In this document: one piece after another, positions 15,101-40,800 of the stretch
Layout of the letters: every line of letters starts with the position of its first letter
Numbering within the stretch: the stretch's first letter is position 1
Translations under genes and position numbers: made by a program
The notes under the pieces: model-generated
What the model saw: only the letters and a program-made list of their open reading frames with translations
Database searches by the model: none
What the model was told of the DNA's origin: nothing
Source of the DNA: Lytechinus pictus
Lineage: Eukaryota
Assembly: GCF_037042905.1 (NCBI RefSeq)
Contig: NC_087246.1
Span: 68,200,001 to 68,264,000, forward strand
Length of the DNA stretch: 64,000 nt
Direction of reading: 5' to 3'

Positions 15101-17708
15101 AGAATAGCGCAATTTTTCTCCCCATTTTGCATGCATTTATCAACTTTCTACAGTTCAAATTGCAAGCCAGTTCGTCATGCGCCCTTTTTGTTGATCTACA
15201 CACAAACACACACACACAGTTGGCCTACCGCTATAGCATTAAGTAGCTTTTATCCAGCCGGCCGCGCCGGCCGGCTGGCGTGAGCTTTGCATGCTTGAAG
15301 CAGCTGTGCGTTAGCAGCCTATTCAGACTCAGGGAGCTGCAATACGAAATGTTGCTGCTAAGAAATCTTCCACAGAACTGTGAAAATCCAAGTCAAAGTC
15401 ACATTTTACACCAATGAAATGCCCTTCTACAGACCTTTTAGCTAAAATCTGGTGTATCCTGATTATTTGCAAGCATTAAAAAGAGGAATCATGACCTCTC
15501 TTTTGACTCAAAAAGACCGATTTCCAAATGAAAATAATACAAATAAAAACACATAGGTGAGTACATCACAGTCCCACATGTGCATTTGTATGTATGTTAC
15601 TTGGTTTCTTTCGAAGCTGTGTCTTTTCCGGTCTTTTCTAGCCAAAGATAAACAGACAGTTACTTTCTTTCTTGTTTATAAATGACTTCTTAAGCAACTC
15701 TTGAGAAAGTAAATACTTTGGGAAGGCATTTCATTAATATGAAATGTGAATTTTTCCAACATTTTGGCAAATTTAGGGAAGGAATTTTTTTCACACTCCT
15801 TTTTGCCGTTTTATTATTTTCTTTCATTTTTTTGACAGTGGTTAAACCATTTATACCCATTTATTCATTTTTAATGTTTTTCTTTATATTTTTCGGGCCA
15901 CCAAACTTTAATATCGGGCCACCAAAAAAAATTATTTGAAGGTTTTGGTGGCCCGAACGGGCCACCACCAAAAAAAGTTAATGTGGAGCCTTGGCTACAC
16001 TACGCTCCACTTACCCGAACTTCGAGACCATGAATTCGATCGGATATTCTGAGTGACAAAAGGTGGGATTTTATGGTTGGAAAATATAAAATTCATGCAA
16101 CATCACGATCTTTAAAAACAAGTACAACTAATATTCTTACTTTACACAAAGCTTCACTTTTTTTCCATGCTTCTATCAGTCTCAAAATTGGTGATTTAGA
16201 GCCAACATGAAGTTCCTCACACGTATAAATATTAACGCGCTGCCGAATTCAAAACATCGCATGCTGGAGGCACCGGGTCGTCCGGTCCGAGCTCGGACCC
16301 TCGCGCATGTGATGTTTTGAAATCGGCAGCGAATTGTTTATACGTGTGAGGAACTTCATGTTGGCTTTAAATCACCAATTTTGAGACTGATAGAAGCATG
16401 AAAAAGAAGTGAAACTTTGTGTAAAGTAAGAATATTAGTTGTACTTGTTTTTAAAGATCGTAATGTTGCATGAATTTTATATTTTCCAACCATAAAATCC
16501 CACCTTTTGTCACTCGGAATATCCGATCGAATTCATGGTCTCGAAGTTCGGGTAGGTGGAGCGTAGTGTAGCGGTAGTGAAGTGGAGTGGAGCCTGCACG
16601 AACTTCGCTCGAGGTAGAGCTAGAGATGAAAGCTAGCACACTTTTCGCATTTGTCAAAAATTGTGATGCCATGGTTACCACATAATATGGCCCAAAAGCC
16701 AGGAAAACTCATTGCAGATGAAGTTTGGCACACATATTTTGGTTGAGATTCATGTTTTGGAAACTGCATTACCATGGTAACAGCATAGGGCAGAACCACC
16801 TTCACTTCAGTTATAGTTTGCTTCACAACTGGCACATTTAGGTGGATAGCTTGTTGTACGAATGCCTACCCCATGATAGGCCATACTAGTACTTCACACT
16901 CGATTGCAGGAAATTTACAATAACGCCTAAGTTACTCTACTGTCTGATGATGGCACTGGAGCTGGAAATATGATTGATATTTATTAATCTAAAAAATAGC
17001 AATGCAATTGTGATGCCAATCACATTACAATAGATTTGATGCTCAGAAAATAATAGGCCTATCTTACAGACTACACACGGGTCACGCCCACTTCCAGGGC
17101 AGTACACGGCCACGTCGCCAGCGGCTAGCAGCCAGCGCTGCAGTGCCAAAACAATACACGCAGATGTAAACAAAATGGTTGCGTCATAACGTGTGCCCTT
17201 TATCATGTTCCGTACCGTACCTTACCTTGTTTGTAAGCGACATCAACACACAGGACAAATCTACTCGAACTGAGCTGAGGGTATCTTTAAAGACCTTTGA
17301 AATATATTTAAAATATCTTTTTAAAAAACAAAAACAGTATTATACAATCGCTAATGTTTAACAAATATCTATTACACGACACAATTACGGAATTAGCAAA
17401 ATTACATCCGCAAATCTTGATATTATTGTTATTCTGTGCCAGTGGTTTCGATTGTTTTGGTTTCATCACTGCATGCTGGGTGCGGGGATTTGTGAACTCA
17501 CCTGATATATTGTGAATGTTGGCAGATCCAAACAGACGGTGCAACACAAAATTTCGTTCAGTCTATCTTCCAGATTTTCTTCCTCGAGTTCTGGTGGTTT
17601 CTCTAGCCTTGGTTTTTTCTTCATCGGTTCGTCACATTCGGAACTTTCTCCGATAACATTAACAGACGAACTTGGTTGATGAGGAATTTGCTCTGCAATT
17701 TCAGCCAT
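1..17708 (-). CDS. CYHR1: Cysteine/histidine-rich protein 1 (RING + TRAF-type zinc finger), 3'-partial gene: join(17708-17502, 11092-10854, 194-<1)
   Basis: Spliced translation MAEIAEQ...[20 protein letters not shown]|[54 protein letters not shown]...GCTER|[38 protein letters not shown]... matches the CYHR1/ZFTRAF1 family as recalled. Introns are GT-AG with compatible phases (0, 2). Confidence 0.93.
434..570. mobile_element. Short MITE/foldback
   Basis: ~38-bp imperfect TIRs CTGAGGCATGTAACATCAAGTTTAGTA... / ...TACTAAATTTGATGTTACAGGGCTCAG. Confidence 0.7.
5188..5748. mobile_element. TTAA-flanked non-autonomous DNA transposon (Kolobok-like)
   Basis: TTAA|AGGGCAAGT...ACTTGCCCT|TTAA; related copies at 19355-19907, 33694-33840 (fragment), ~49540-50196. 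Confidence 0.8.
5768..5794. repeat. (AG)n microsatellite
   Basis: Direct observation. Confidence 0.9.
10854..11092 (-). CDS. CYHR1: CYHR1 coding exon 2 (239 nt)
   Basis: Acceptor TACAG|TGT; encodes [11 protein letters not shown]...CPNCR...[13 protein letters not shown]; donor AAG|GTAACC. Confidence 0.95.
11232..12122. mobile_element. Helentron/DINE-like non-autonomous element with ~5 x 150-bp internal tandem repeats
   Basis: ATATGAGCCT recurs at 11401, 11551, 11701, 11851 (variant ~12002); begins AAACAAGAG; GACAGACGGAC and short palindrome near the end. Confidence 0.7.
12518..13885. mobile_element. hAT-like non-autonomous element
   Basis: 8-bp TSD CACCTCAG (12510-12517; 13886-13893); imperfect TIRs CAGGCGAGTAGCCAGG / CCTGGCTACGCGGTTG. 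Confidence 0.8.
14932..16616. mobile_element. Mutator-like foldback element, interrupted by the 14983-15993 insertion
   Basis: 9-bp TSD GAGCTAGAG (14923-14931; 16617-16625); ~320-bp near-perfect TIRs; partial copy at ~41222-41626. Confidence 0.85.
14983..15993. mobile_element. P-superfamily-like non-autonomous element nested in the foldback
   Basis: CAAGGCTCGACATTA...TAATGTGGAGCCTTG termini; 7-bp TSD GCTACAC. Confidence 0.75.
17502..17708 (-). CDS. CYHR1: CYHR1 coding exon 1 (207 nt)
   Basis: ATG at 17708 (ACTATGG), KKKPR NLS-like motif, start of RING (CCTVCLDLP), donor CAG|GTGAGT. Confidence 0.9.
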
Positions 17709-31800: not shown

Positions 31801-34800
31801 AAAATATACCACTCACTAGAGGTTCATGTGGCATGTGCGGTGATACATGCCGTAATACATGGCGTGTCACCTGCTGACTAGGGGGAAGCTATTGGTAAAT
31901 CTTACTTCAAACAAAGCAGTGATTTTGGAGATAAAACAGACACTAAACATATTGTTTGTAAACTAAGGTAGGTCTAAAAGAAGCTAAACAAGTTCAGCTG
32001 GGCGAGCTATAAGCTGGGCAAAGATGCCACTAGGGCTCGAATCATGGGATTTTGTTAATGAGGTCGATATGAGCAAATAATTCAGGGTATGGGTCACAAT
32101 TCTCCCCCCCCCCCAAAAAAAAAAAAATAATAATAATAATAATAATTCAGGGTTCAAAGGGTTAATCATTGCTTAGTGGCAGAAATGTAGAACAGGTCCT
32201 GAAATTTTAGTAATATGAACAACGATCTCTTTTTTTTTTAAACTTACCCCAAAGGATGCCATGATTTGTTGTATTACAACAAAAGCTAGAACAATCAATG
32301 CTGCTAGGAACACATACAGGAAAAATCTGTAATGAAAAATAATCAAATAACGATTACAACTCAATTTTTTTTTTTTTTTAACATTAATACTTGATATTCA
32401 TATGAAATACAAAGAACTTTGAGACGCCTCCCTGGTATTAAATCATAGGAGATAATATACAAACAAATAACTAGGAAGTAGAAGTATTGGTCTGTGTGAT
32501 CAGGATATAGAATAGGTAGGTTTTCAAGTTAGGTTTGAAATACAGAATAATCATATATTGACTGGCTTTGAGGAAGATACCACATATTTCCTGAAGTAAT
32601 TGATGTCTTGATGAGAGCAATATGGGTCTACTGAGGAAAGTATAATCTGGAATCTCCCGAAAATTAAAGCCATTCGATAGTATCATTACCTACATGCCTA
32701 CAGTTGTATGGTGTGTATGTCTGTTGGTACTTCTGAATTCATTAACTTTATGAAGTAATCCTAGCCTTGACTAATTGTGACATGAGTGTATACAGCGCAG
32801 GCGCGCACATACACAAGACTTGCGCTTGGGTTTAATGAAATGGGTACACATACATATATTATGGACCGATAATTTACTACAAAGACGCAAAATGACAAAT
32901 TCGAAGAGTAGTGGTGTATGAATATTATGGTCCCCGTCATACAGCTGAATCCTGGCTGGGCCATTGTGACGTATATTGGGTTGAGTTTATCAATCAGACA
33001 GACAAAATATATGTTTTATATCTTGTCTCCAAAATGCCTCATTCAGATGAAAAAAAACAATCAAGGATATGGTATGTATGTGGCATATCTGAACATACTC
33101 CTTGAAAATATGTCATCTTATCTAGAAAAAATAACTTTACCTCCAAAGTTAACAAAAAAATATCAGGTAAAGAAATTTTCTTTATATAATTTTGGTCATC
33201 TGTCAAAATATTTGCAGCATGAAAATGCTTATCGCTAGTTGTCATGCACTGAATCTTCACTAAACAACAAAATCTTCACTTTGTGATATAAAATGAGAAT
33301 GAAAATTATATGATTTCCTATCTTGAATAAAAACCACAAGAATGGAAGTCATGCCAGAATTTTTTTTTTCAAGACTCCACGGTGTCTTCTCAGTTGAGTT
33401 CCAATAATCTCACTGGCAACTTAACAGAGATATCAATCAATTTGAAAAAAGAAAACTAAGAAAAAGTATGAAATGCTGATCCTACTTGCATAGGTTTAAT
33501 TTCAATAAAATAACAATTGAATTTGATTTTTAACATTGGAAGTCTAAAACAAAAATATTGAACGCATAAGGAGAAATTACTTACGTTTCTGTGTCTAGAC
33601 CTTCATCTAATTCAATAAGAGAAACTGTGTCATTGAAAACAGCATCTGAAAAAAGGTTTCCTTCCTGCATTGATAAAAAAGATGACCAGTATATTAAAGG
33701 TCAAGTCCACCTCAGAAAAATGTTGATTTAAATCAGACAAGCATAATGCTGAAAATTTCATTAAAATCGGATGTAAAATAAGAAAGTTATGCATATAACT
33801 ATTTTGTGAAATTAAACGAAACTTAAAAATTTCATAACTCATAGTTCACTTCACACCAATCAACTTTATAGTTCAAATTATAATCCATTTTGTAACTTGC
33901 TTTGTAGCAAAAATACAATTTTTTTTAAAGCCCTCTCACATGAAATAAAAACTATCATGTACAAAGGTGTTCTCAGACTCTGGTTATCTGAAATCATACT
34001 TTCCCTATCTTGCCACAAAGAAGGGGCTTGTCACAGACTGGACAATGATGGATGCCTACAATAACTAATCTCCACAGAAGTACTCTATGTTTATCAGTAA
34101 GAGCAAGCAGAACCATCATGTCCATTAATGTCTAATGACTAAAGCTCAGGGATGGACTCTAAACCTAGTACAATGAATGAAGACAGCATGAAAAACTCAA
34201 TGCTAGTCAACATTAATAGTAAAGGACAGAGACAAACACTCCTTCATTGAAGTCAAGAGAGGGATAGTTCAGACCAAATGCCTTCCAGCTTAACATCATC
34301 GAACAGGCAACTCGATCACTTTCACATCATATTATAATTGGCTTTTATTATATTTCACACTTTGGGTATGTCGAGTATGGGAAAGGGTGCTGTATGATGT
34401 TACGCAACACCTTTTCTGTATCAAACAAGGAAACGGATGATTGAGAATCAACAATGTTTAATTGAAACTTACTGAATCTTTGTATGCGAGCTCAACAACG
34501 AATCCAAACTGACGTGCAGCAAAGACCTCTCCTGCTTGGAATGAATATTCAAATGTTGCTTCTTTGTTGGGTTCTACTACTGTGTTGTATTCTTTCTCTG
34601 TGAACTAGTAAGCAAAATAAAAAGAAAGATATGAAGCATCGTTTCCTGAATATCATTCATTCATTTCCACCTGACATTATATGGCCAGATGGATTTCTAG
34701 AGAAGAAACCTCTTTAAAAAAATGTAAGAATAAAGATCAAAACAAATGTAAATGAGGGAAAAAGCAATAGAATATTAACTTACAAATACAGACTCTGTTT

Positions 34801-37800
34801 AAACCACAGTAATCTGTTGGAATTGGGAGAAATTTGACTTTAAAACAAAGAATAACATGTGTCTTTCATAATCTAGCCTCAAAATTTACTTTGACTCATA
34901 GAAGGTCGACTTATGCAGTGTTAATCATAGAAAAAATACTTAAATATCAATGTGTATAGGAAAATAAATGAAATATTTTGCATGGTCTAAAGTGTTACAT
35001 TATACAAATAAAAATAATGTGTTTTGAATAAGGATAAAAATCTGTATACATTTTCTGCATTAGCAGTTGTACAGAAAAATGTTTTTGACTGCTTCTTCTT
35101 CTTTATTGTATAGGCAATACAATAAAGCTTAAAGGAAAATGAAACTCTTGGAGCAAGTTAGCTTTTGTGAAAGCAGAAAAATCAAAGAATAAGATCAACA
35201 AAAGTTTGAGTAAAATAGGACTAGCAATAGAAGAGTTATGAGCATTTGAATGTCTAGATCACTAATACTATGGAAATCCTCCAATTGGCAACGCAACCAA
35301 GATCTATGATATCACAGATGAACAACTCTCCCCTTTTGGACACTGAAAATATACCCCAAAACATCTCTTTTTGCTCATTCTAATCATATGACAAACGATT
35401 CATCAATGATATAATGTTGTGAAACATCTGTACTTGTCCTCTCATAAAGAAAACACCTCACCTTGTGATAGATTCTATAAAAGTGAGAATATAAGTGAAA
35501 TAAGTACTAAAGCAATGAGGGAGTTGTACGTGTGTGACATCACAGATCTTGGTCGCATTGCCAATGGGAGGATCTACATGGCATTAGTGATCTCAATATT
35601 CAAATGCTCATAACTTTCTTATTATTCATTCAATCTTCCTCAAACTTTCAACAATATGTTTCTTTGATTTTTCTCTTTGATATGGATTCAGCTGGTTTTA
35701 AGGGTTTCATTCTCCTTTAATTCTGCAATTTACTTTGATGAAACTTACATTGTACATGTAAAATGAGAAGTCCTGTGGATACCGTAGAGATGCATGTAGA
35801 CTGTCAATTGTGAAATCAAGTTGGCCATTGTTTGTAAATCCAACCAAGACTTGTAATGGGATAGTCACTGGGATTTCTACAGAGATACAGAAAGATATTT
35901 TATGATTGCAAGTAATAGATGGTAAATCATGTAACAAACGATTTGCATCCCTATGTATGTAATCAACAAAATTTGAAGGTCTCCGTCCTCTGGTTTTATG
36001 AGGGAGACACAACAAAAGTACATCAGAAATAACTTCCTTCTCACTACGGAAACAGAGACCAGCAAATCTCATAGTACATTTAATTACAGTGAAGAAATTT
36101 CATATAACGAAACAATGTAATGCACATGAATTTTGACATACTAGTACCGTGTTTACACTTAATCGGCATTTGAATCGGCTCGCGGTTCTGAACCGCGAGC
36201 CGATTCAGCATCGGCTTTTTCATAGCGTGTAAACGCAAGCAACTTGAATCGGCTCGCGGTTCAGAACCGGCAATTTGCACCACCAAAGTAGTAGGTTCTG
36301 AACCGCGAGCCGATGCAGAATCGGCTTTTTTACTACGTGTAAACAGAAAGCCAATTCTGCACTGGCAATTTGTGCGCATTTCAATTACTTTACCATTGTG
36401 ACGTAATTGTAAGCGCACTGATCCAGCGTTGTCTTTATTATGACGTATATTGTAGGTATGCGTATCATTTCAGGTTTTTGCATCGGCTCGCGGTTCTGAA
36501 CCGCGAGCTGTAACAACGTGTAAACGCAATCCAAATGCCGATTCTGCATCGGCATTTGGTTCAGAACCAATTGCCGATTAAGTGTAAACACGGTATTAGA
36601 CACCCACATTTTGTGGTATTACCGGCATGCAAATGAGTGTTAACACCGAGCACAGTGATATAGAAATACGTATCACGATCCAAAGTATATATCTTAAAAG
36701 ATTTGGGGAGCATTATTGTAGTCACATATTTTTTTTGTAAAACCTGGTAAAAATATATTTTGGCTATTACTAGAGTTTTGAAAAAGCAGTAGATTCTACT
36801 GTAAGGAGAGTAAAAAAAGTGGAAAGTGGTGAGAATGCTTGAAAAGCAGTAGACTACCACCAAAGGTGGTAGAGTTGGCAGCTATGGGTTTTTCCATTTC
36901 CCCCATGTTAAAGGGATGGTCCAGGCGGGAAATATTTATATCTCAATAAAGAGAGTAAAATTCACAGCGCAAAATGCTGAAAATTTGATCAAAATCGGAT
37001 AACAAATAACAAAGTTATTGCATTTTAAAGATTTGCATTATTCTGGTGAAACAGTTCTAGGCACGTCGTTATGGATATTCATTAGGTGGGCTGATGATGT
37101 CATATCCCCACTTGTTCTTTTGTATATTTTTATATGAAATTAGGTTTATTCAAATATTTTCTACCAAGAACTAAAACAATTGGACTGACAATTGATTGAG
37201 TACATTAGTTATTTATTGCTGCAACTTATTTCATTATGATGGAGACACATCATTTACACATGTATGAAAAAATTAAACATTTATGATTTCATGTAATAAC
37301 ATAAGAAAAAGGAAAGTGGAGATGTGACATCATCAGCCCACCTAATGAATATTCATGACGATGTGCATATAACTGTTTTTAAAAAATATTGATAAACTTT
37401 AAAATTCAATAACTTCATTATTTTTTATTCAATTTGATGAAACTTTCAGCATTTTGCTCTGTGAATTTTACTCTATTTATTTAGATATAAATATTTTCAG
37501 CCCGGACCATCCCTTCAATACTCTAGATGAAGAGTCAAAGAGAAGGATCAAAATCTTACCTTTCTCTGAATTTGTAGTGAAAAGAAAGGTTGTGTCAGCA
37601 TCTGGTGATGCCTTCAGTGGGGGCTCTTCCTCTTCATCCTCCTCCTCTTCCCCTTCTCCTGCTTCTACTGCTGTCCCTTCTTCTTCTACATCTTCTTCTG
37701 TCTCAACCTAATATAGTAAAGATAGTAGCCTTATTATATAAGGGAGTACTGTCAGTCAATATTTTTTTCAAGACATAAAATAATGTTTACCTTGACAGCC

Positions 37801-40800
37801 AATCACAGCTCGCTGTTTAACGTCCTTGTCTCTTTCGGTTCTATTACATGTATAAAGTGTTTTGCTCTAGCGTTCGGGTCATTCATACAATTTTACTCCG
37901 ATGAGTGCATGTCGAAAAGCTTCAGTATGTCCGTTTTTAAGCACTTAGAGACATTCTTTGTGATAAGCGCTATATAAATGTTAATTATTATTATTATTTA
38001 ACGCTACAGTTGTATTTTACAAGATATTTAATACATGTAAACTGGGTTCCAAAAGAAACTGATCAAACTTTACAATCTATGCACATGTGGTACTACAGAC
38101 TACTACCCAAGGATCATATGTACCAAGTATGAACTTAATTGATGCAGAAATAAAGAAATGAGGGCAAGTTGAACAAAAACAAAATAATGATGGACATGTC
38201 CTCATACATGTATCATTTGACCTTTTGACCCGTACAGCGTACACGTACATGTATGTAGATGACCTTTGACCCCATCGATGGTACGACACACATGTGGTAT
38301 TACCTACTGATAACATGTACCAAATATGGACTTAATTGATGCAGAAATAAAGAAATGAGAGCAAGTTGGAACAAAAACTAACATTTTGGAACAGACTGGA
38401 CAATGACTAACATACATATCAGCATGAGGGCTTTGAGGAGTAGGCCTATATCTTTTTTTGCACATGTTTTGCACTATTTTGGCTTCTCTAAAATGATGCG
38501 AAGGTGTTTGGTATATCTTCCGATCGCAAATTCAACAACCCGCAAAAGTGTCGGACCCCATGATTCTTAAAAATTATGTACACGAAATTAACAGCTCTTA
38601 CTATAGAATACTAGCTCTGAGAGACATGGCAATTTCACTATTTCACTTGGAGATGGGAGTAAAATCACATGGGATACTTATTATGAACAAAGGTGTTCTC
38701 AGCCTCTGGTTATCTGAAATCATACTTTCCCTATCTTGCCACAAAGAAGGGGCTTGTCACAGACTGGACAATGATGGATGCCTACAATAACTAATCTCCA
38801 CAGAAGTACTCTATGTTTATCAGTAAGAGCAAGCAGAACCATCATGTCCATTAATGTCTAATGACTAAAGCTCAGGGATGAACTCTAAACCTAGTACAAT
38901 GAATGAAGACAGCATGAAAAACTCAATGCTAGTCAACATTAATAGTAAAGGACAGAGACAAACACTCCTTCATTGAAGTCAAGAGAGGGATAGTTCAGAC
39001 CAAATGCCTTCCAGCTTAACATCATTGAACAAGCAACACAATTTCTTTTAAATGATATTTATAAGGTCTCCATATGTTTAAAATAAAAAAGTGATTAAAC
39101 TTATCAAAACTTTTGCACAATGTTGGATCATTTCAAGAAATGATTGCACTATGATCTCTGTTGGATGATTTCAGACTTAGTTCGGAGTGCCTATTAATAG
39201 TGCCCCCTGTAAGTTTAACAGTACATTGTTTTTTTTTAACACCTACTAAACTTCATGAACCTGGTCAAACCTACTTGGGGCTCGTAACACATAGGTTAGC
39301 GATTAATCGCTAAATGAATGGCTTATCAAGATCATCCTTGCATGCGCGTTTTGCCCTGTAGACTGACTAGGAACCAATCACAATTGTTCTTTCAAATTTG
39401 CGATTAACCGCTAATCTTTGTGTTACGGAGCCCAGGAGGAAGTAACATAATTAATATCCATATTGAATTTTCTTTTATTTATTCATTATAATAATAATAA
39501 TACCGCTGGGAAAACAGTTTTCAGAACTGAAGTGGCTTCCCTGGGTAAATATATACCTAAGATCTTATTATTATTTTCATTATGATCAACTTGATTATAA
39601 CCAATTGTATAATCCTTTGTATACACTGCACATTACCCAGATCATATTATACCTGTCCATCTTCTTCATCTTCCTCCTCCTCTTCCTCTATCTCCTCCCC
39701 ATCCAAGATATCTTCAAGGTTGTCACGAGTTTCTCTCTGATCTTTGGCAGCCAGGGCACCTAGTAATAAAATAAAAGTAACAGTTGTCTATGTTTTGGTT
39801 CAAGATACATCAAGTTTATATTTCTTCTCGGAGAACGGGAGTCTATAACAAAAGGTATATGAAATATACTTTAACTCATTACCACCTCAAAACACTTTAA
39901 ATCATGTCCAGACAAAAAAAGACCCCTATAAATTTTGAGATGAACAACAACTTTCCATTCCGATATTTTCGCCGATATCAATTTTCGGTATTGGTGTGCC
40001 CTGCTGATTAAAACAGCATTTCATTGAACTTCGCAGATTGGTAATGAAACTTGACTTTGAATCATAGCGCATGTGAAAATCAAAACATCACATGCAAATT
40101 TGGCCACCACCGAATCGGCAGGTTTCTGACACGCATAAGAAAAATCCTGGCGAGAACGCTGGTCGACTCATCACTGAGAAAACTTCATAAAGTTTGATAC
40201 AAAATTATGCAAATTGCACCTAGAATATGCATTTATTTGCATATTCAAGGTAAATGTAAATCAAACAGTTTTAAAATGTAGAGAATCCCATAAACTTCAA
40301 AACGAATGGTCATGACATAGGTCTACACATGTTATCAGTAGTAGAGTAAAGTCCCCAAACATCGGACAATTCCAAATATCGGACGAAAATGACGACTCTC
40401 TCCTCATAACTACAGGGACCCGCACTGGCAGGGGACTTGCATGCATAAGATACATGAACATACCTGCCATGCGATTACTGCACACACAATTTTTTTAATT
40501 CTTTTTTATTTCGCCAAGACGCATATCGCGATATGCGTGGTGTCATCTTGGCGAAATACAAAGAGATCAAGATGGTGACGTAAACACGGTGGCAAGTTAT
40601 TCCCGTCTTTTCATATTTTTCTTGTTATTTTAATGAATTCTTGTTTAAAAATGAAATTGATAGTGTTGAAATGTCGGAAATGGAGTTGTATCCCATTTAC
40701 ATGATGATTTAGGGCTAGATCTTTCAGAAGTGAAGTAGAAATCTTGGGGGCAAAAACTCCTGTTTCTTGGGCGGTACACGTACATGAATGGGAAGGAATC

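What the first reader, a model, noticed from the sequence alone, without database searches (positions are those of the whole stretch)
33968..39031. Duplicated, oversized (338-nt) box C/D RNA in SSR1 introns 2 and 5
Seen: 33968-34305 and 38694-39031 are identical apart from 3 substitutions, with no indels, while the flanks diverge just outside. The host-sense strand reads TGTTC-g-ATGATGT (C) - guide TAAGCTGGAAGGCATTTGGT - CTGA (D') - ~270-nt insert - ATGATTT (C') - CAGATAACCAGAG[T/G] - CTGA (D) - GAACA. The TGTTC/GAACA stem sits in exact K-turn register. The insert closes with ACTATCCCTCTCTTG/CAAGATAGGGAAAGT and hand-folds into a Y with two long hairpins (GGACATGATGG/CCATCATTGTCC; GACTAGCATTGA/TCATGCTGTC). 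Two of the three differences are at tolerant positions (nt before C, nt before D). There are no long TIRs or TSD, so it is not a MITE. Established: C/D snoRNAs are usually 70-120 nt; 240-420-nt forms (SNORD17, U85, U90, SCARNA2/9) are rare. I do not recognise this as any of them and see no H/ACA domain. Inference: a functional, possibly undescribed long C/D RNA kept by selection or gene conversion. An alternative tandem reading is possible (extra ATGAAGG, CTGA, ATGATGG, CTGA boxes inside).
Basis: partly seen in the sequence, partly recalled or inferred. Interest (0 to 1): 0.9.

Follow-up and report, generated by a model that had tools for sequence, protein, structure and literature searches.

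The report
Giant duplicated box C/D snoRNA
Two introns of the TRAP-alpha (SSR1) gene each release an abundant, discrete RNA of about 335 nt that looks like an ordinary rRNA-methylation guide (box C/D snoRNA), except that a 271-nt folded insert makes it three to four times the usual size.

Summary
Window 33968-34305 and 38694-39031 are 338-nt copies with 3 substitutions and no indels. They are the only two copies in the 812-Mb genome. Both lie in sense orientation in introns of a TRAP-alpha/SSR1 gene.

rRNA-depleted, strand-specific RNA-seq shows a stable RNA. Depth is 226-1306x over the element, 0-1x in adjacent unique intron and 4-12x on host exons, on the host-sense strand only. Read ends fall within about 10 nt of the predicted termini. 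A second species yields a 343-nt RNA contig about 97% identical.

The anatomy is that of a box C/D snoRNA:
- terminal stem UGUUC/GAACA in K-turn register
- C box AUGAUGU and D box CUGA
- internal D' CUGA and C' AUGAUUU, clamped by a 23-bp stem that opens into a Y of two long hairpins (fold z = -6.7)

The D' guide pairs 11 bp with 28S GCCAAAUGCCU. It places the second A, equivalent to yeast Am2280, at the methylation position. Four canonical-size U15 copies elsewhere in the genome aim at the neighbouring A. The D guide has no target in rRNA, U2, U5 or U6. Rfam has no match.

Verdict: a real, undescribed, oversized C/D snoRNA, which is a new variant of a known kind. Methylation, snoRNP proteins and any role of the insert remain untested.

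The parts
33968..34305 (-). Copy A of the 338-nt box C/D RNA. It lies in the intron downstream of exon 34472-34604.
   Evidence: RNA-seq depth is 226-338x (X20) and 177-265x (X21), host-sense strand only.
38694..39031 (-). Copy B of the 338-nt box C/D RNA. It lies in the intron upstream of the exon that covers at least 37560-37709.
   Evidence: RNA-seq depth is up to 1306x (X20) and 886x (X21). Read starts at 38698 and read ends at 39020/39021. A 343-nt contig from a second species aligns to 38706-39030.
34301..34305 (-). Copy A, 5' half of the terminal stem (UGUUC, RNA positions 1-5). Copy B equivalent: 39027-39031.
   Evidence: It pairs with GAACA at 33968-33972, with one spacer nucleotide before box C, which is the K-turn register.
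34293..34299 (-). Copy A, box C (AUGAUGU, RNA positions 7-13). Copy B equivalent: 39019-39025.
34273..34283 (-). Copy A, D' guide (AGGCAUUUGGU, RNA positions 23-33). Copy B equivalent: 38999-39009.
   Evidence: It forms 11 bp (10 Watson-Crick plus 1 G-U) with 28S GCCAAAUGCCU at 28S positions 2625-2635 of this genome. The fifth pair from the box falls on A2629. Only 8 of 1000 shuffled spacers do as well.
34269..34272 (-). Copy A, box D' (CUGA, RNA positions 34-37). Copy B equivalent: 38995-38998.
33998..34268 (-). Copy A, 271-nt insert between D' and C' (RNA positions 38-308). Closing stem 38-65/282-308 (23 bp); arm 1 at 66-158; arm 2 at 161-280. Copy B equivalent: 38724-38994.
   Evidence: The stretch 33997-34268 (the insert plus the first C' nucleotide) folds at -98.8 kcal/mol, against -65.1 +/- 5.0 for shuffles (z = -6.7). 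Helices are listed. All 10 listed between-species differences fall in the two arms.
33991..33997 (-). Copy A, box C' (AUGAUUU, RNA positions 309-315). Copy B equivalent: 38717-38723.
   Evidence: TGATT starts at position 310, with the A at 309.
33977..33990 (-). Copy A, D-side spacer or orphan guide (CAGAUAACCAGAGU, RNA positions 316-329). Copy B equivalent: 38703-38716, ending in G.
   Evidence: No duplex of 9 bp or more abutting the box on 18S, 5.8S or 28S. Best is 8 bp on 18S. At most 7 bp on U2, U5 and U6.
33973..33976 (-). Copy A, box D (CUGA, RNA positions 330-333). Copy B equivalent: 38699-38702.
33968..33972 (-). Copy A, 3' half of the terminal stem (GAACA, RNA positions 334-338). Copy B equivalent: 38694-38698.
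   Evidence: The lowest read starts are at 33972 and 38698, which is RNA position 334.
35749..35876 (-). Host-gene exon (TRAP-alpha/SSR1) between the two copies. Neighbouring exons are 34472-34604 and 37560-37709; the latter extends further upstream.
   Evidence: Pfam PF03896 hit at 27.9 bits, above the cut-off. Spliced reads join 34604^35749 and 35876^37560, with GT..AG on the minus strand. Translation.

Best explanation
Each copy is an intron-encoded box C/D small nucleolar RNA. After the TRAP-alpha/SSR1 pre-mRNA is spliced, exonucleases trim the intron back to a particle assembled on the terminal C/D K-turn (UGUUC-N-AUGAUGU ... CUGA-GAACA). This leaves a stable RNA of about 335 nt.

The 271-nt insert sits exactly where C/D RNAs tolerate extra sequence, between D' and C'. 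Its 23-bp closing stem brings D' (CUGA) and C' (AUGAUUU) together, so the two box pairs keep normal snoRNP geometry despite the size.

The guide upstream of D' pairs with 28S rRNA at GCCAAAUGCCU in the H70/H71 region of domain IV. It should direct fibrillarin to 2'-O-methylate the second A, the equivalent of yeast Am2280. The canonical-size U15 snoRNAs of the same genome aim at the adjacent A (yeast Am2281, human A3764). Two RNAs would then divide a job that the single snR13 does in yeast.

The D-side guide has no identified target.

The two copies are kept nearly identical by purifying selection on the RNA, probably helped by gene conversion.

Shown: the duplication, the copy number, the stable strand-specific RNA, the box anatomy, the fold and the complementarity.
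Inferred: the snoRNP proteins, the processing route, the methylation, the division of labour with U15 and the gene conversion.
For: Only two copies exist in the genome, 99.1% identical, while the flanks decay to background within 50-100 nt.

Expression in rRNA-depleted stranded RNA-seq from two samples:
- 226-1306x over the elements
- 0-1x in adjacent unique intron
- 4-12x on host exons
- all reads in host sense
- read starts at RNA position 334 in both copies, and read ends about 10 nt inside the predicted 5' end, as expected for this library type
- the poly(A)-type run X23 gives 0x on the element and 90-178x on the exons, so the RNA is not polyadenylated
- in the second species, run X11 has no unique-intron coverage but holds a 343-nt contig at depth 153, with 8 substitutions and 3 indels

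The boxes and stems are in K-turn register.

The minus strand folds far better than shuffles (z = -5.1; insert stretch alone -6.7). The plus strand does not (z = -2.0).

The D' guide forms 11 bp abutting the box. Only 8 of 1000 shuffled spacers match that. The target is a documented conserved methylation site. Residue identities for U2268-G2288 given in PMC4174444 match the numbering used here. SNORD15 is assigned to 28S A3764 in PMC5389715 and PMC6461891.

Four canonical U15-like loci end in ...GAGGCAUUUGU|CUGA and so aim one nucleotide further along.

The 10 listed between-species differences all lie at RNA positions 85-208. None is in the boxes, guides or closing stem.
Against: - There is no direct evidence for fibrillarin, NOP56, NOP58 or SNU13 binding, or for methylation of the predicted A.
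- An 11-bp guide is near the lower end for methylation guides.
- The D-side guide is an orphan.
- Box C ends in U rather than A, and C' (AUGAUUU) is degenerate. The C'/D' motif is one nucleotide off ideal K-turn register.
- Neither snoRNA sits at the roughly 70-nt distance from the 3' splice site seen for vertebrate intronic C/D RNAs. Copy B is about 985 nt from it and copy A more than 268 nt.
- The 5' end is not mapped to the nucleotide.
- Reads from the identical parts of the two copies cannot be assigned, so separate expression of each copy rests on a few discriminating positions.
- Comparative data cover only close relatives, and no covariation test was possible.
Confidence: 0.75

Rival explanations
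1. It is a real box C/D snoRNP, but the 28S match is not used. The RNA would be an orphan snoRNA whose job lies in the large insert or in the untargeted D guide. Examples are an RNA chaperone or scaffold role, or a target among mRNAs, tRNAs or snRNAs that were not tested.
For: - The genome already has four canonical U15 copies covering this rRNA segment.
- The guide is only 11 bp.
- The D guide is conserved between the copies apart from its last nucleotide, yet has no rRNA, U2, U5 or U6 target.
- The insert is unusually stable.
Against: - The guide abuts D' exactly and places a known conserved Am site at the fifth position. Only 8 of 1000 shuffles give such a duplex anywhere on rRNA, before asking that it hit a known site.
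- The insert has no rRNA complementarity beyond chance: 3 duplexes of 11 bp or more against 1.9 expected, and two of its 11-bp rRNA matches, including one of those three, are broken by substitutions in the second species.
- The between-species changes pile up in the insert arms, not in the guide.
Confidence: 0.15
2. It is a stable intronic RNA of another kind. It might be a highly structured stable intron fragment, a precursor of small RNAs from its long hairpins, or a composite of two degenerate snoRNA-like halves. The C/D-like strings would be incidental.
For: - The RNA is dominated by long helices.
- Several very small RNA-type runs of the second species hold 35-53% of its sampled words.
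- Internal C-like and D-like strings exist, and positions 180-259 give a weak SNORD103-like Rfam alignment at E = 3.7.
Against: - The ends of the RNA-seq signal coincide with the terminal stem and C/D motif in both copies, although the flanks are unrelated.
- All four boxes are in the correct order, spacing and register.
- The internal box-like strings are buried in perfect helices, such as GGACAUGAUGG/CCAUCAUUGUCC, and have no partner D box or terminal stem.
- The Rfam hit is at chance level.
Confidence: 0.06
3. It is a low-copy mobile element or a recent segmental duplicate with no function of its own. The coverage would then be retained intron or a mapping artefact.
For: The surrounding introns are full of dispersed repeats that attract reads from both strands, for example 33700-33886, 35009-35756 and 36879-37626.
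Against:
- Coverage is strictly one-stranded and 20-300 times that of the host exons, with zero signal in adjacent unique intron.
- The flanks have decayed while the element stays 99% identical.
Confidence: 0.02

Closest known systems
SNORD15 / U15 (Rfam RF00067) and yeast snR13
   Same: - It is a box C/D guide complementary to the same 28S/25S segment (GCCAAAUGCCUC, H70/H71 of domain IV).
- Yeast snR13 guides Am2280 and Am2281 (PMC4174444). Human SNORD15A/B guide A3764 (PMC5389715, PMC6461891).
- It is longer than an average C/D RNA, with a structured internal region.
- Like U15A/U15B in RPS3 (from memory), it is present as two copies in introns of one host gene.
   Different: - There is no covariance-model match, even at E <= 10. 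Four other loci in this genome match RF00067 over its full length at 59-60 bits.
- The guide lies upstream of D', not D.
- It aims at the second A of CCAAAU (yeast A2280), not the third.
- It is 338 nt, against about 150 nt.
- The host is SSR1.
Long single-domain C/D snoRNAs such as human SNORD17 (about 240 nt), and yeast snR190, snR4 and snR45 (170-190 nt) (sizes from memory)
   Same: They have one terminal C/D motif, with extra structured sequence accommodated inside the RNA.
   Different: - There is no sequence or Rfam relationship.
- This RNA is about 100 nt longer than those examples.
- Its extra sequence is a single Y-shaped module inserted precisely between D' and C'.
Tandem C/D-C/D scaRNAs (SCARNA2, SCARNA9, SCARNA17; 350-420 nt, from memory)
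   Same: The overall length is similar, and several C-like and D-like strings are present.
   Different: - Those RNAs contain two complete C/D domains and guide snRNA modification.
- Here the internal box-like strings are buried in helices without terminal stems.
- Neither guide matches U2, U5 or U6.
- The one good target is rRNA.
sno-lncRNAs (intron-derived RNAs capped at each end by a complete snoRNA; from memory)
   Same: It is an intron-derived stable RNA whose ends are protected by snoRNP elements.
   Different: Here the two ends pair with each other to form one C/D motif. There are not two complete snoRNAs.

Membership tests
Box C/D snoRNA (2'-O-methylation guide class) | Box C (RUGAUGA) near the 5' end and box D (CUGA) near the 3' end, flanked by a 4-5 bp terminal stem in K-turn register | tested here: met
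   UGUUC-(G/A)-AUGAUGU ... CUGA-GAACA in both copies. The last box C position is U instead of A.
Box C/D snoRNA (2'-O-methylation guide class) | Internal D' and C' boxes in the order C, D', C', D | tested here: met
   D' is CUGA at positions 34-37 and C' is AUGAUUU at 309-315, held together by a 23-bp stem. The register is one nucleotide off ideal.
Box C/D snoRNA (2'-O-methylation guide class) | A guide of 10 nt or more ending at D or D', complementary to rRNA or snRNA, with the target at the fifth pair | tested here: met
   The D' guide forms 11 bp on 28S 2625-2635, and the fifth pair is A2629, equivalent to yeast A2280. The D guide has no target.
Box C/D snoRNA (2'-O-methylation guide class) | Accumulates as a discrete, non-polyadenylated RNA in host sense, with ends set by the C/D motif | tested here: met
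   226-1306x on one strand, 0-1x in the flanks, absent from the poly(A)-type run, and a 343-nt contig in a second species.
Box C/D snoRNA (2'-O-methylation guide class) | Bound by SNU13/15.5K, NOP56, NOP58 and fibrillarin, and located in the nucleolus | not testable with these tools
   This needs immunoprecipitation or CLIP, and FISH.
Box C/D snoRNA (2'-O-methylation guide class) | The predicted target nucleotide is 2'-O-methylated in a way that depends on the guide | not testable with these tools
   This needs RiboMeth-seq or RTL-P, with and without the RNA.
SNORD15/U15 (RF00067) | Match to the family covariance model | tested here: not met
   There is no SNORD15 hit in the element even at E <= 10. 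Four other loci in the genome match the full model at 59-60 bits.
SNORD15/U15 (RF00067) | A D-box guide aimed at the human A3764 / yeast A2281 equivalent | tested here: not met
   The guide is at D' and the fifth pair falls on the neighbouring A.
Tandem C/D-C/D scaRNA | Two complete C/D domains, each with its own terminal stem, and guides to snRNAs | tested here: not met
   The internal boxes are buried in helices and lack stems. No complementarity of more than 7 bp to U2, U5 or U6. Other snRNAs were not tested.
MITE / dispersed repeat | Many genomic copies in either orientation, with terminal inverted repeats and target-site duplications | tested here: not met
   There are two copies only, both in host sense. 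Terminal inverted repeats and target-site duplications were not searched for with a tool, and none was noted at the ends.

The most novel reading that the evidence does not exclude
The 271-nt Y-shaped insert is a functional module in its own right, for example a protein-binding or localisation platform, or a source of smaller RNAs. That would make this a bifunctional RNA and the founder of a lineage-specific class of giant C/D snoRNAs. It would also show that the doublet methylated by one snoRNA in yeast (Am2280/Am2281) is split here between U15 and a dedicated giant partner.
Probability: 0.2. Interest if true: 0.7.

Novelty: new variant of a known kind. Interest (0 to 1): 0.55.

Why it matters
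This adds an undescribed snoRNA family with direct expression evidence. At about 335 nt it is, as far as I know, at the extreme upper size for a single-domain, intron-encoded methylation guide.

It shows how far the D'-C' linker of a C/D snoRNP can be expanded when a long helix restores box geometry. That bears on models of snoRNP architecture and on snoRNA gene finders, which usually cap length near 150-200 nt and would miss it. Rfam missed it.

It also gives a testable case of two snoRNAs aimed at adjacent nucleotides of a functionally important rRNA cluster (H70/H71, where loss of methylation destabilises yeast 60S subunits; PMC4174444).

The class, the biogenesis route and the type of target are all conventional, so this is an interesting variant and not a new principle.

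Tried and rejected
- **Rfam.** Gathering threshold over the whole window gave nothing. At E <= 10 on the element there were only chance-level hits, SNORD103 at E = 3.7 and mir-463 at E = 7.5.
- **U5 as target of the D guide.** From memory of vertebrate U5, the D guide seemed to match ACUCUGGUU at its 5' end. This genome's U5 genes start differently and give at most 6 bp. Rejected.
- **U2 and U6 as targets.** At most 7 bp and 4 bp.
- **18S as target of the D guide.** Best is 8 bp (UCUGGUUA), starting two nucleotides from the box and not at a known site. This is chance level.
- **Extra rRNA or spacer pairing by the insert.** Three duplexes of 11 bp or more were observed against 1.9 expected from shuffles. 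Two of the insert's 11-bp rRNA matches, including one of those three, are broken by substitutions in the second species.
- **Tandem or twin C/D reading.** The internal boxes are buried in helices.
- **MITE or repeat.** Two copies only.
- **A third copy.** The exact 15-mer AGGCATTTGGTCTGA also occurs on contig C19, but with no C box or similarity around it. This is chance.
- **Homologues in metagenome contigs.** Two pattern scans came back empty.
- **Taxon from an exon.** The protein atlas search gave no useful hit.
- **Host gene of the canonical U15 copies.** The ribosomal protein S3 search failed on a tool error. The ORF list of the C10 locus shows no obvious coding exons. Left open.
- **Covariation from the between-species differences.** There are too few changes, one substitution is unlisted, and the changes do not map cleanly onto the MFE pairs. 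The one suggestive case is position 171: C in the other two species and U in the window, which turns C-G into U-G in helix 167-172/271-276.
- **Literature.** No paper links SSR1 with a snoRNA, and nothing useful turned up on sea-urchin C/D snoRNAs.

Full report
**Observation**

Window 33968-34305 and 38694-39031 were read directly and aligned on the minus strand. The two stretches are 338 nt long and differ by three substitutions with no indels. In RNA sense these are position 6 (G/A), 151 (C/U) and 329 (U/G).

Outside the element, similarity decays quickly. In the first 10 flanking nt, 7/10 and 9/10 positions are identical. In the first 25 nt the figures are 17/25 and 16/25. By 50-100 nt it is at background.

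A search of the whole 812-Mb assembly with the element returns exactly these two places. It is therefore not a dispersed repeat. The duplicate cannot be young, because the flanks have decayed while the element stays 99.1% identical.

**Host gene**

A Pfam TRAP_alpha (PF03896) match above the curated cut-off lies on the minus strand at 35728-35877.

Spliced RNA-seq reads join 34604^35749 and 35876^37560, with GT..AG on the minus strand. The joined exons translate to an acidic tract followed by ...[43 protein letters not shown].... From memory, this is the TRAP-alpha/SSR1 signature.

Both copies are in host sense. Three exons lie between them, so they sit in introns n and n+3.

**Is it an RNA?**

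Two rRNA-depleted, stranded total-RNA runs (X20 and X21, 'organism A') were laid on 33700-39300.

| Region | X20 | X21 |
|---|---|---|
| Copy A bins | 338 and 226 | 265 and 177 |
| Centre of copy B | 1306 | 886 |
| Unique intron beside the copies | 0-1 | 0-1 |
| Host exons | 4-12 | 4-12 |

- Every element read is in the orientation also shown by the host exons (first mate on +). The RNA is therefore on the minus strand.
- The lowest read starts are at 33972 and 38698, which is RNA position 334 in both copies, one nucleotide past box D.
- Reads end at 39020/39021, about 10 nt inside the predicted 5' end. That is the usual 5' loss of second-strand-based libraries (established knowledge, not tested here).
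- A poly(A)-type run of a second species (X23) covers the exons at 90-178x and the element at 0x, as expected for a non-polyadenylated RNA.
- A contig set from that second species (X11) has no coverage of unique intron. It holds a free-standing 343-nt contig, depth 153, that aligns to 38706-39030 with 8 substitutions and 3 indels.
- The element's sampled words occur in runs of seven studies from the two organisms.

**Anatomy, in RNA positions**

| Feature | Positions | Sequence or note |
|---|---|---|
| 5' terminal stem | 1-5 | UGUUC |
| Spacer nucleotide | 6 | G/A |
| Box C | 7-13 | AUGAUGU |
| Spacer with guide | 14-33 | 20 nt; last 11 nt are the guide |
| Box D' | 34-37 | CUGA |
| Insert | 38-308 | 271 nt |
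| Box C' | 309-315 | AUGAUUU |
| D-side spacer | 316-329 | 14 nt |
| Box D | 330-333 | CUGA |
| 3' terminal stem | 334-338 | GAACA |

The terminal motif has the K-turn register: stem, three-nucleotide bulge (N, A, U), tandem G-A/A-G, then U-U. The variable positions 6 and 329 are ones the motif tolerates.

The insert folds into a 23-bp closing stem (38-65/282-308) that opens into two long hairpins (66-158 and 161-280). The stretch folded (positions 38-309, the insert plus the first C' nucleotide) reaches -98.8 kcal/mol, against -65.1 +/- 5.0 for dinucleotide shuffles (z = -6.7).

The full RNA gives z = -5.1 on the minus strand but only -2.0 on the plus strand. This asymmetry is expected of an RNA that uses G-U pairs.

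The closing stem begins directly after D' and ends directly before C'. The large insert therefore leaves the C'/D' pair juxtaposed, although one nucleotide off ideal register.

**Guides**

An rDNA unit of the same genome was fetched and delimited with Rfam.

*D' guide.* AGGCAUUUGGU forms 11 contiguous pairs (10 Watson-Crick, 1 G-U) with 28S GCCAAAUGCCU. The duplex starts at the nucleotide next to D', and the fifth pair falls on the second A (28S A2629 here). Only 8 of 1000 shuffled spacers reach such a duplex anywhere on 18S, 5.8S or 28S.

The site is part of the conserved methylation cluster of H70/H71. PMC4174444 gives yeast Am2280 and Am2281 (snR13), m5C2278 and Gm2288. The residue identities it mentions (U2268, U2269, U2274, A2275, C2278, G2283) fit the numbering that makes the predicted target A2280. 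SNORD15A/B are assigned to human 28S A3764. From memory of the human U15A sequence and of m5C numbering, A3764 corresponds to yeast A2281.

The genome also contains four canonical-size matches to the SNORD15 model: one at C7:32207185-32207336 and three in tandem at C10:21875121-21877334. They are 152-156 nt, cover the full model and score 59-60 bits. They end in ...GAGGCAUUUGU|CUGA|GAGG, which puts the third A at the fifth pair.

The giant RNA is thus not the U15 orthologue. It is a second guide for the adjacent nucleotide.

*D-side spacer.* CAGAUAACCAGAG(U/G) has no duplex of 9 bp or more on rRNA. It has at most 7 bp on this genome's U2, U5 and U6. It is an orphan guide.

**Conservation**

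Relative to the window, organism A reads carry three fixed differences, at RNA positions 164, 171 and 172. They appear at the corresponding places of both copies (34142/38868, 34135/38861, 34134/38860). The second species shares them.

If the mapping to each copy is trusted, the window's lineage changed the same three positions in both copies. That points to gene conversion. The caveat is that reads over the identical parts of the two copies cannot be assigned uniquely.

All 10 listed differences between the window and the second species lie at positions 85-208, in the two distal arms. None is in the boxes, guides or closing stem. One further substitution is not listed in the output.

Divergence of the element (about 2.5% plus 3 indels) is similar to that of the neighbouring coding exons (0-2.3%). 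Neutral intron divergence could not be measured.

**Mechanism**

The best-supported reading is a conventional intron-derived box C/D snoRNP that methylates 28S at the yeast-A2280 equivalent. It carries an unusually large, self-contained structured module in the D'-C' linker. I put this at about 0.75.

The snoRNP proteins, the exonucleolytic processing and the methylation are inferred from the class. They are not shown here.

Rivals:
- A genuine C/D RNP whose rRNA match is unused, with its function in the insert or the D guide: about 0.15.
- A different kind of stable structured intronic RNA: about 0.06.
- A functionless duplicate or repeat: about 0.02, already contradicted.

**Comparison with known families**

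- It works like U15/snR13 but fails membership. There is no covariance-model match, the guide is on the other side of the RNA, the target is shifted by one nucleotide, and the host differs.
- It is not a tandem C/D scaRNA, because the internal box-like strings are buried in helices.
- It is not in Rfam 15.
- No paper in the searchable library links SSR1 to a snoRNA.

Other notes of this scan report multi-intron snoRNA copies in several genes of this genome. The duplication as such is therefore ordinary. The size and the insert are the unusual part.

**Verdict**

This is a real, expressed, undescribed and oversized box C/D snoRNA, a new variant of a known kind. Interest is moderate at 0.55. It is noteworthy for snoRNP architecture, snoRNA annotation and the H70/H71 methylation cluster, but it is conventional in class and likely function.

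Noticed in passing
L010:1501-1652 (G000 C7:32207185-32207336, +); L011-L013 (C10:21875121-21875276, 21876042-21876197, 21877179-21877334, +): Four canonical-size (152-156 nt) U15/SNORD15-like snoRNAs score 59-60 bits, below Rfam's gathering score of 75. Three of them lie in tandem about 1 kb apart, with no obvious coding exons between them, which may indicate a non-coding host gene. Their D guide aims at the A next to the one targeted by the giant RNA.
   Followed up: partly
window 16941-17283 (+): A box C (UGAUGAUGG) is followed by ACUGGAGCUGGAA, a perfect 13-nt complement of 18S UUCCAGCUCCAGU (18S about 586-598). This is probably a separate C/D snoRNA on the plus strand. Its D' box and 3' end are unclear. 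The 343-nt C-to-D pairing my script proposed may be chance.
   Followed up: partly
window 32495-32694 (-): Another first-reader note (s1-325017) proposes a second long C/D-like RNA in the next SSR1 intron. I read the sequence only. It lies outside the stretch on which reads were laid, so expression is untested.
   Followed up: no
window 33700-33886, 35009-35756, 36879-37626: These intronic stretches are covered on both strands at 60-540x, with many loose ends and inverted joints. They are dispersed repeats, including the inverted-repeat elements 35175-35335/35514-35674 and 36908-37113/37314-37518. Their reads come from copies elsewhere in the genome.
   Followed up: partly
window 36318-36504: Signal here is strand-biased in the opposite sense to the host gene (about 100x against 10-19x). 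It overlaps the palindromic GGTTCTGAACCGCGAGCCGAT... repeats at 36184-36344 and 36518-36568. It may be an antisense or repeat-derived transcript.
   Followed up: no
window 34134, 34135, 34142 and 38860, 38861, 38868: Both copies in the window carry the same three clustered bases, which differ from the RNA of both other organisms sampled. This suggests concerted evolution (gene conversion) between the two intronic copies. It also shows that the RNA-seq individuals or species are not the assembled one.
   Followed up: partly
G000 C13:21634859-21678634 and C8:33237223-33284622: There are large tandem arrays of U5 genes (about 1.36-kb repeat, some inverted pairs) and U2 genes (about 1.04-kb repeat, at least 45 units).
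   Followed up: no
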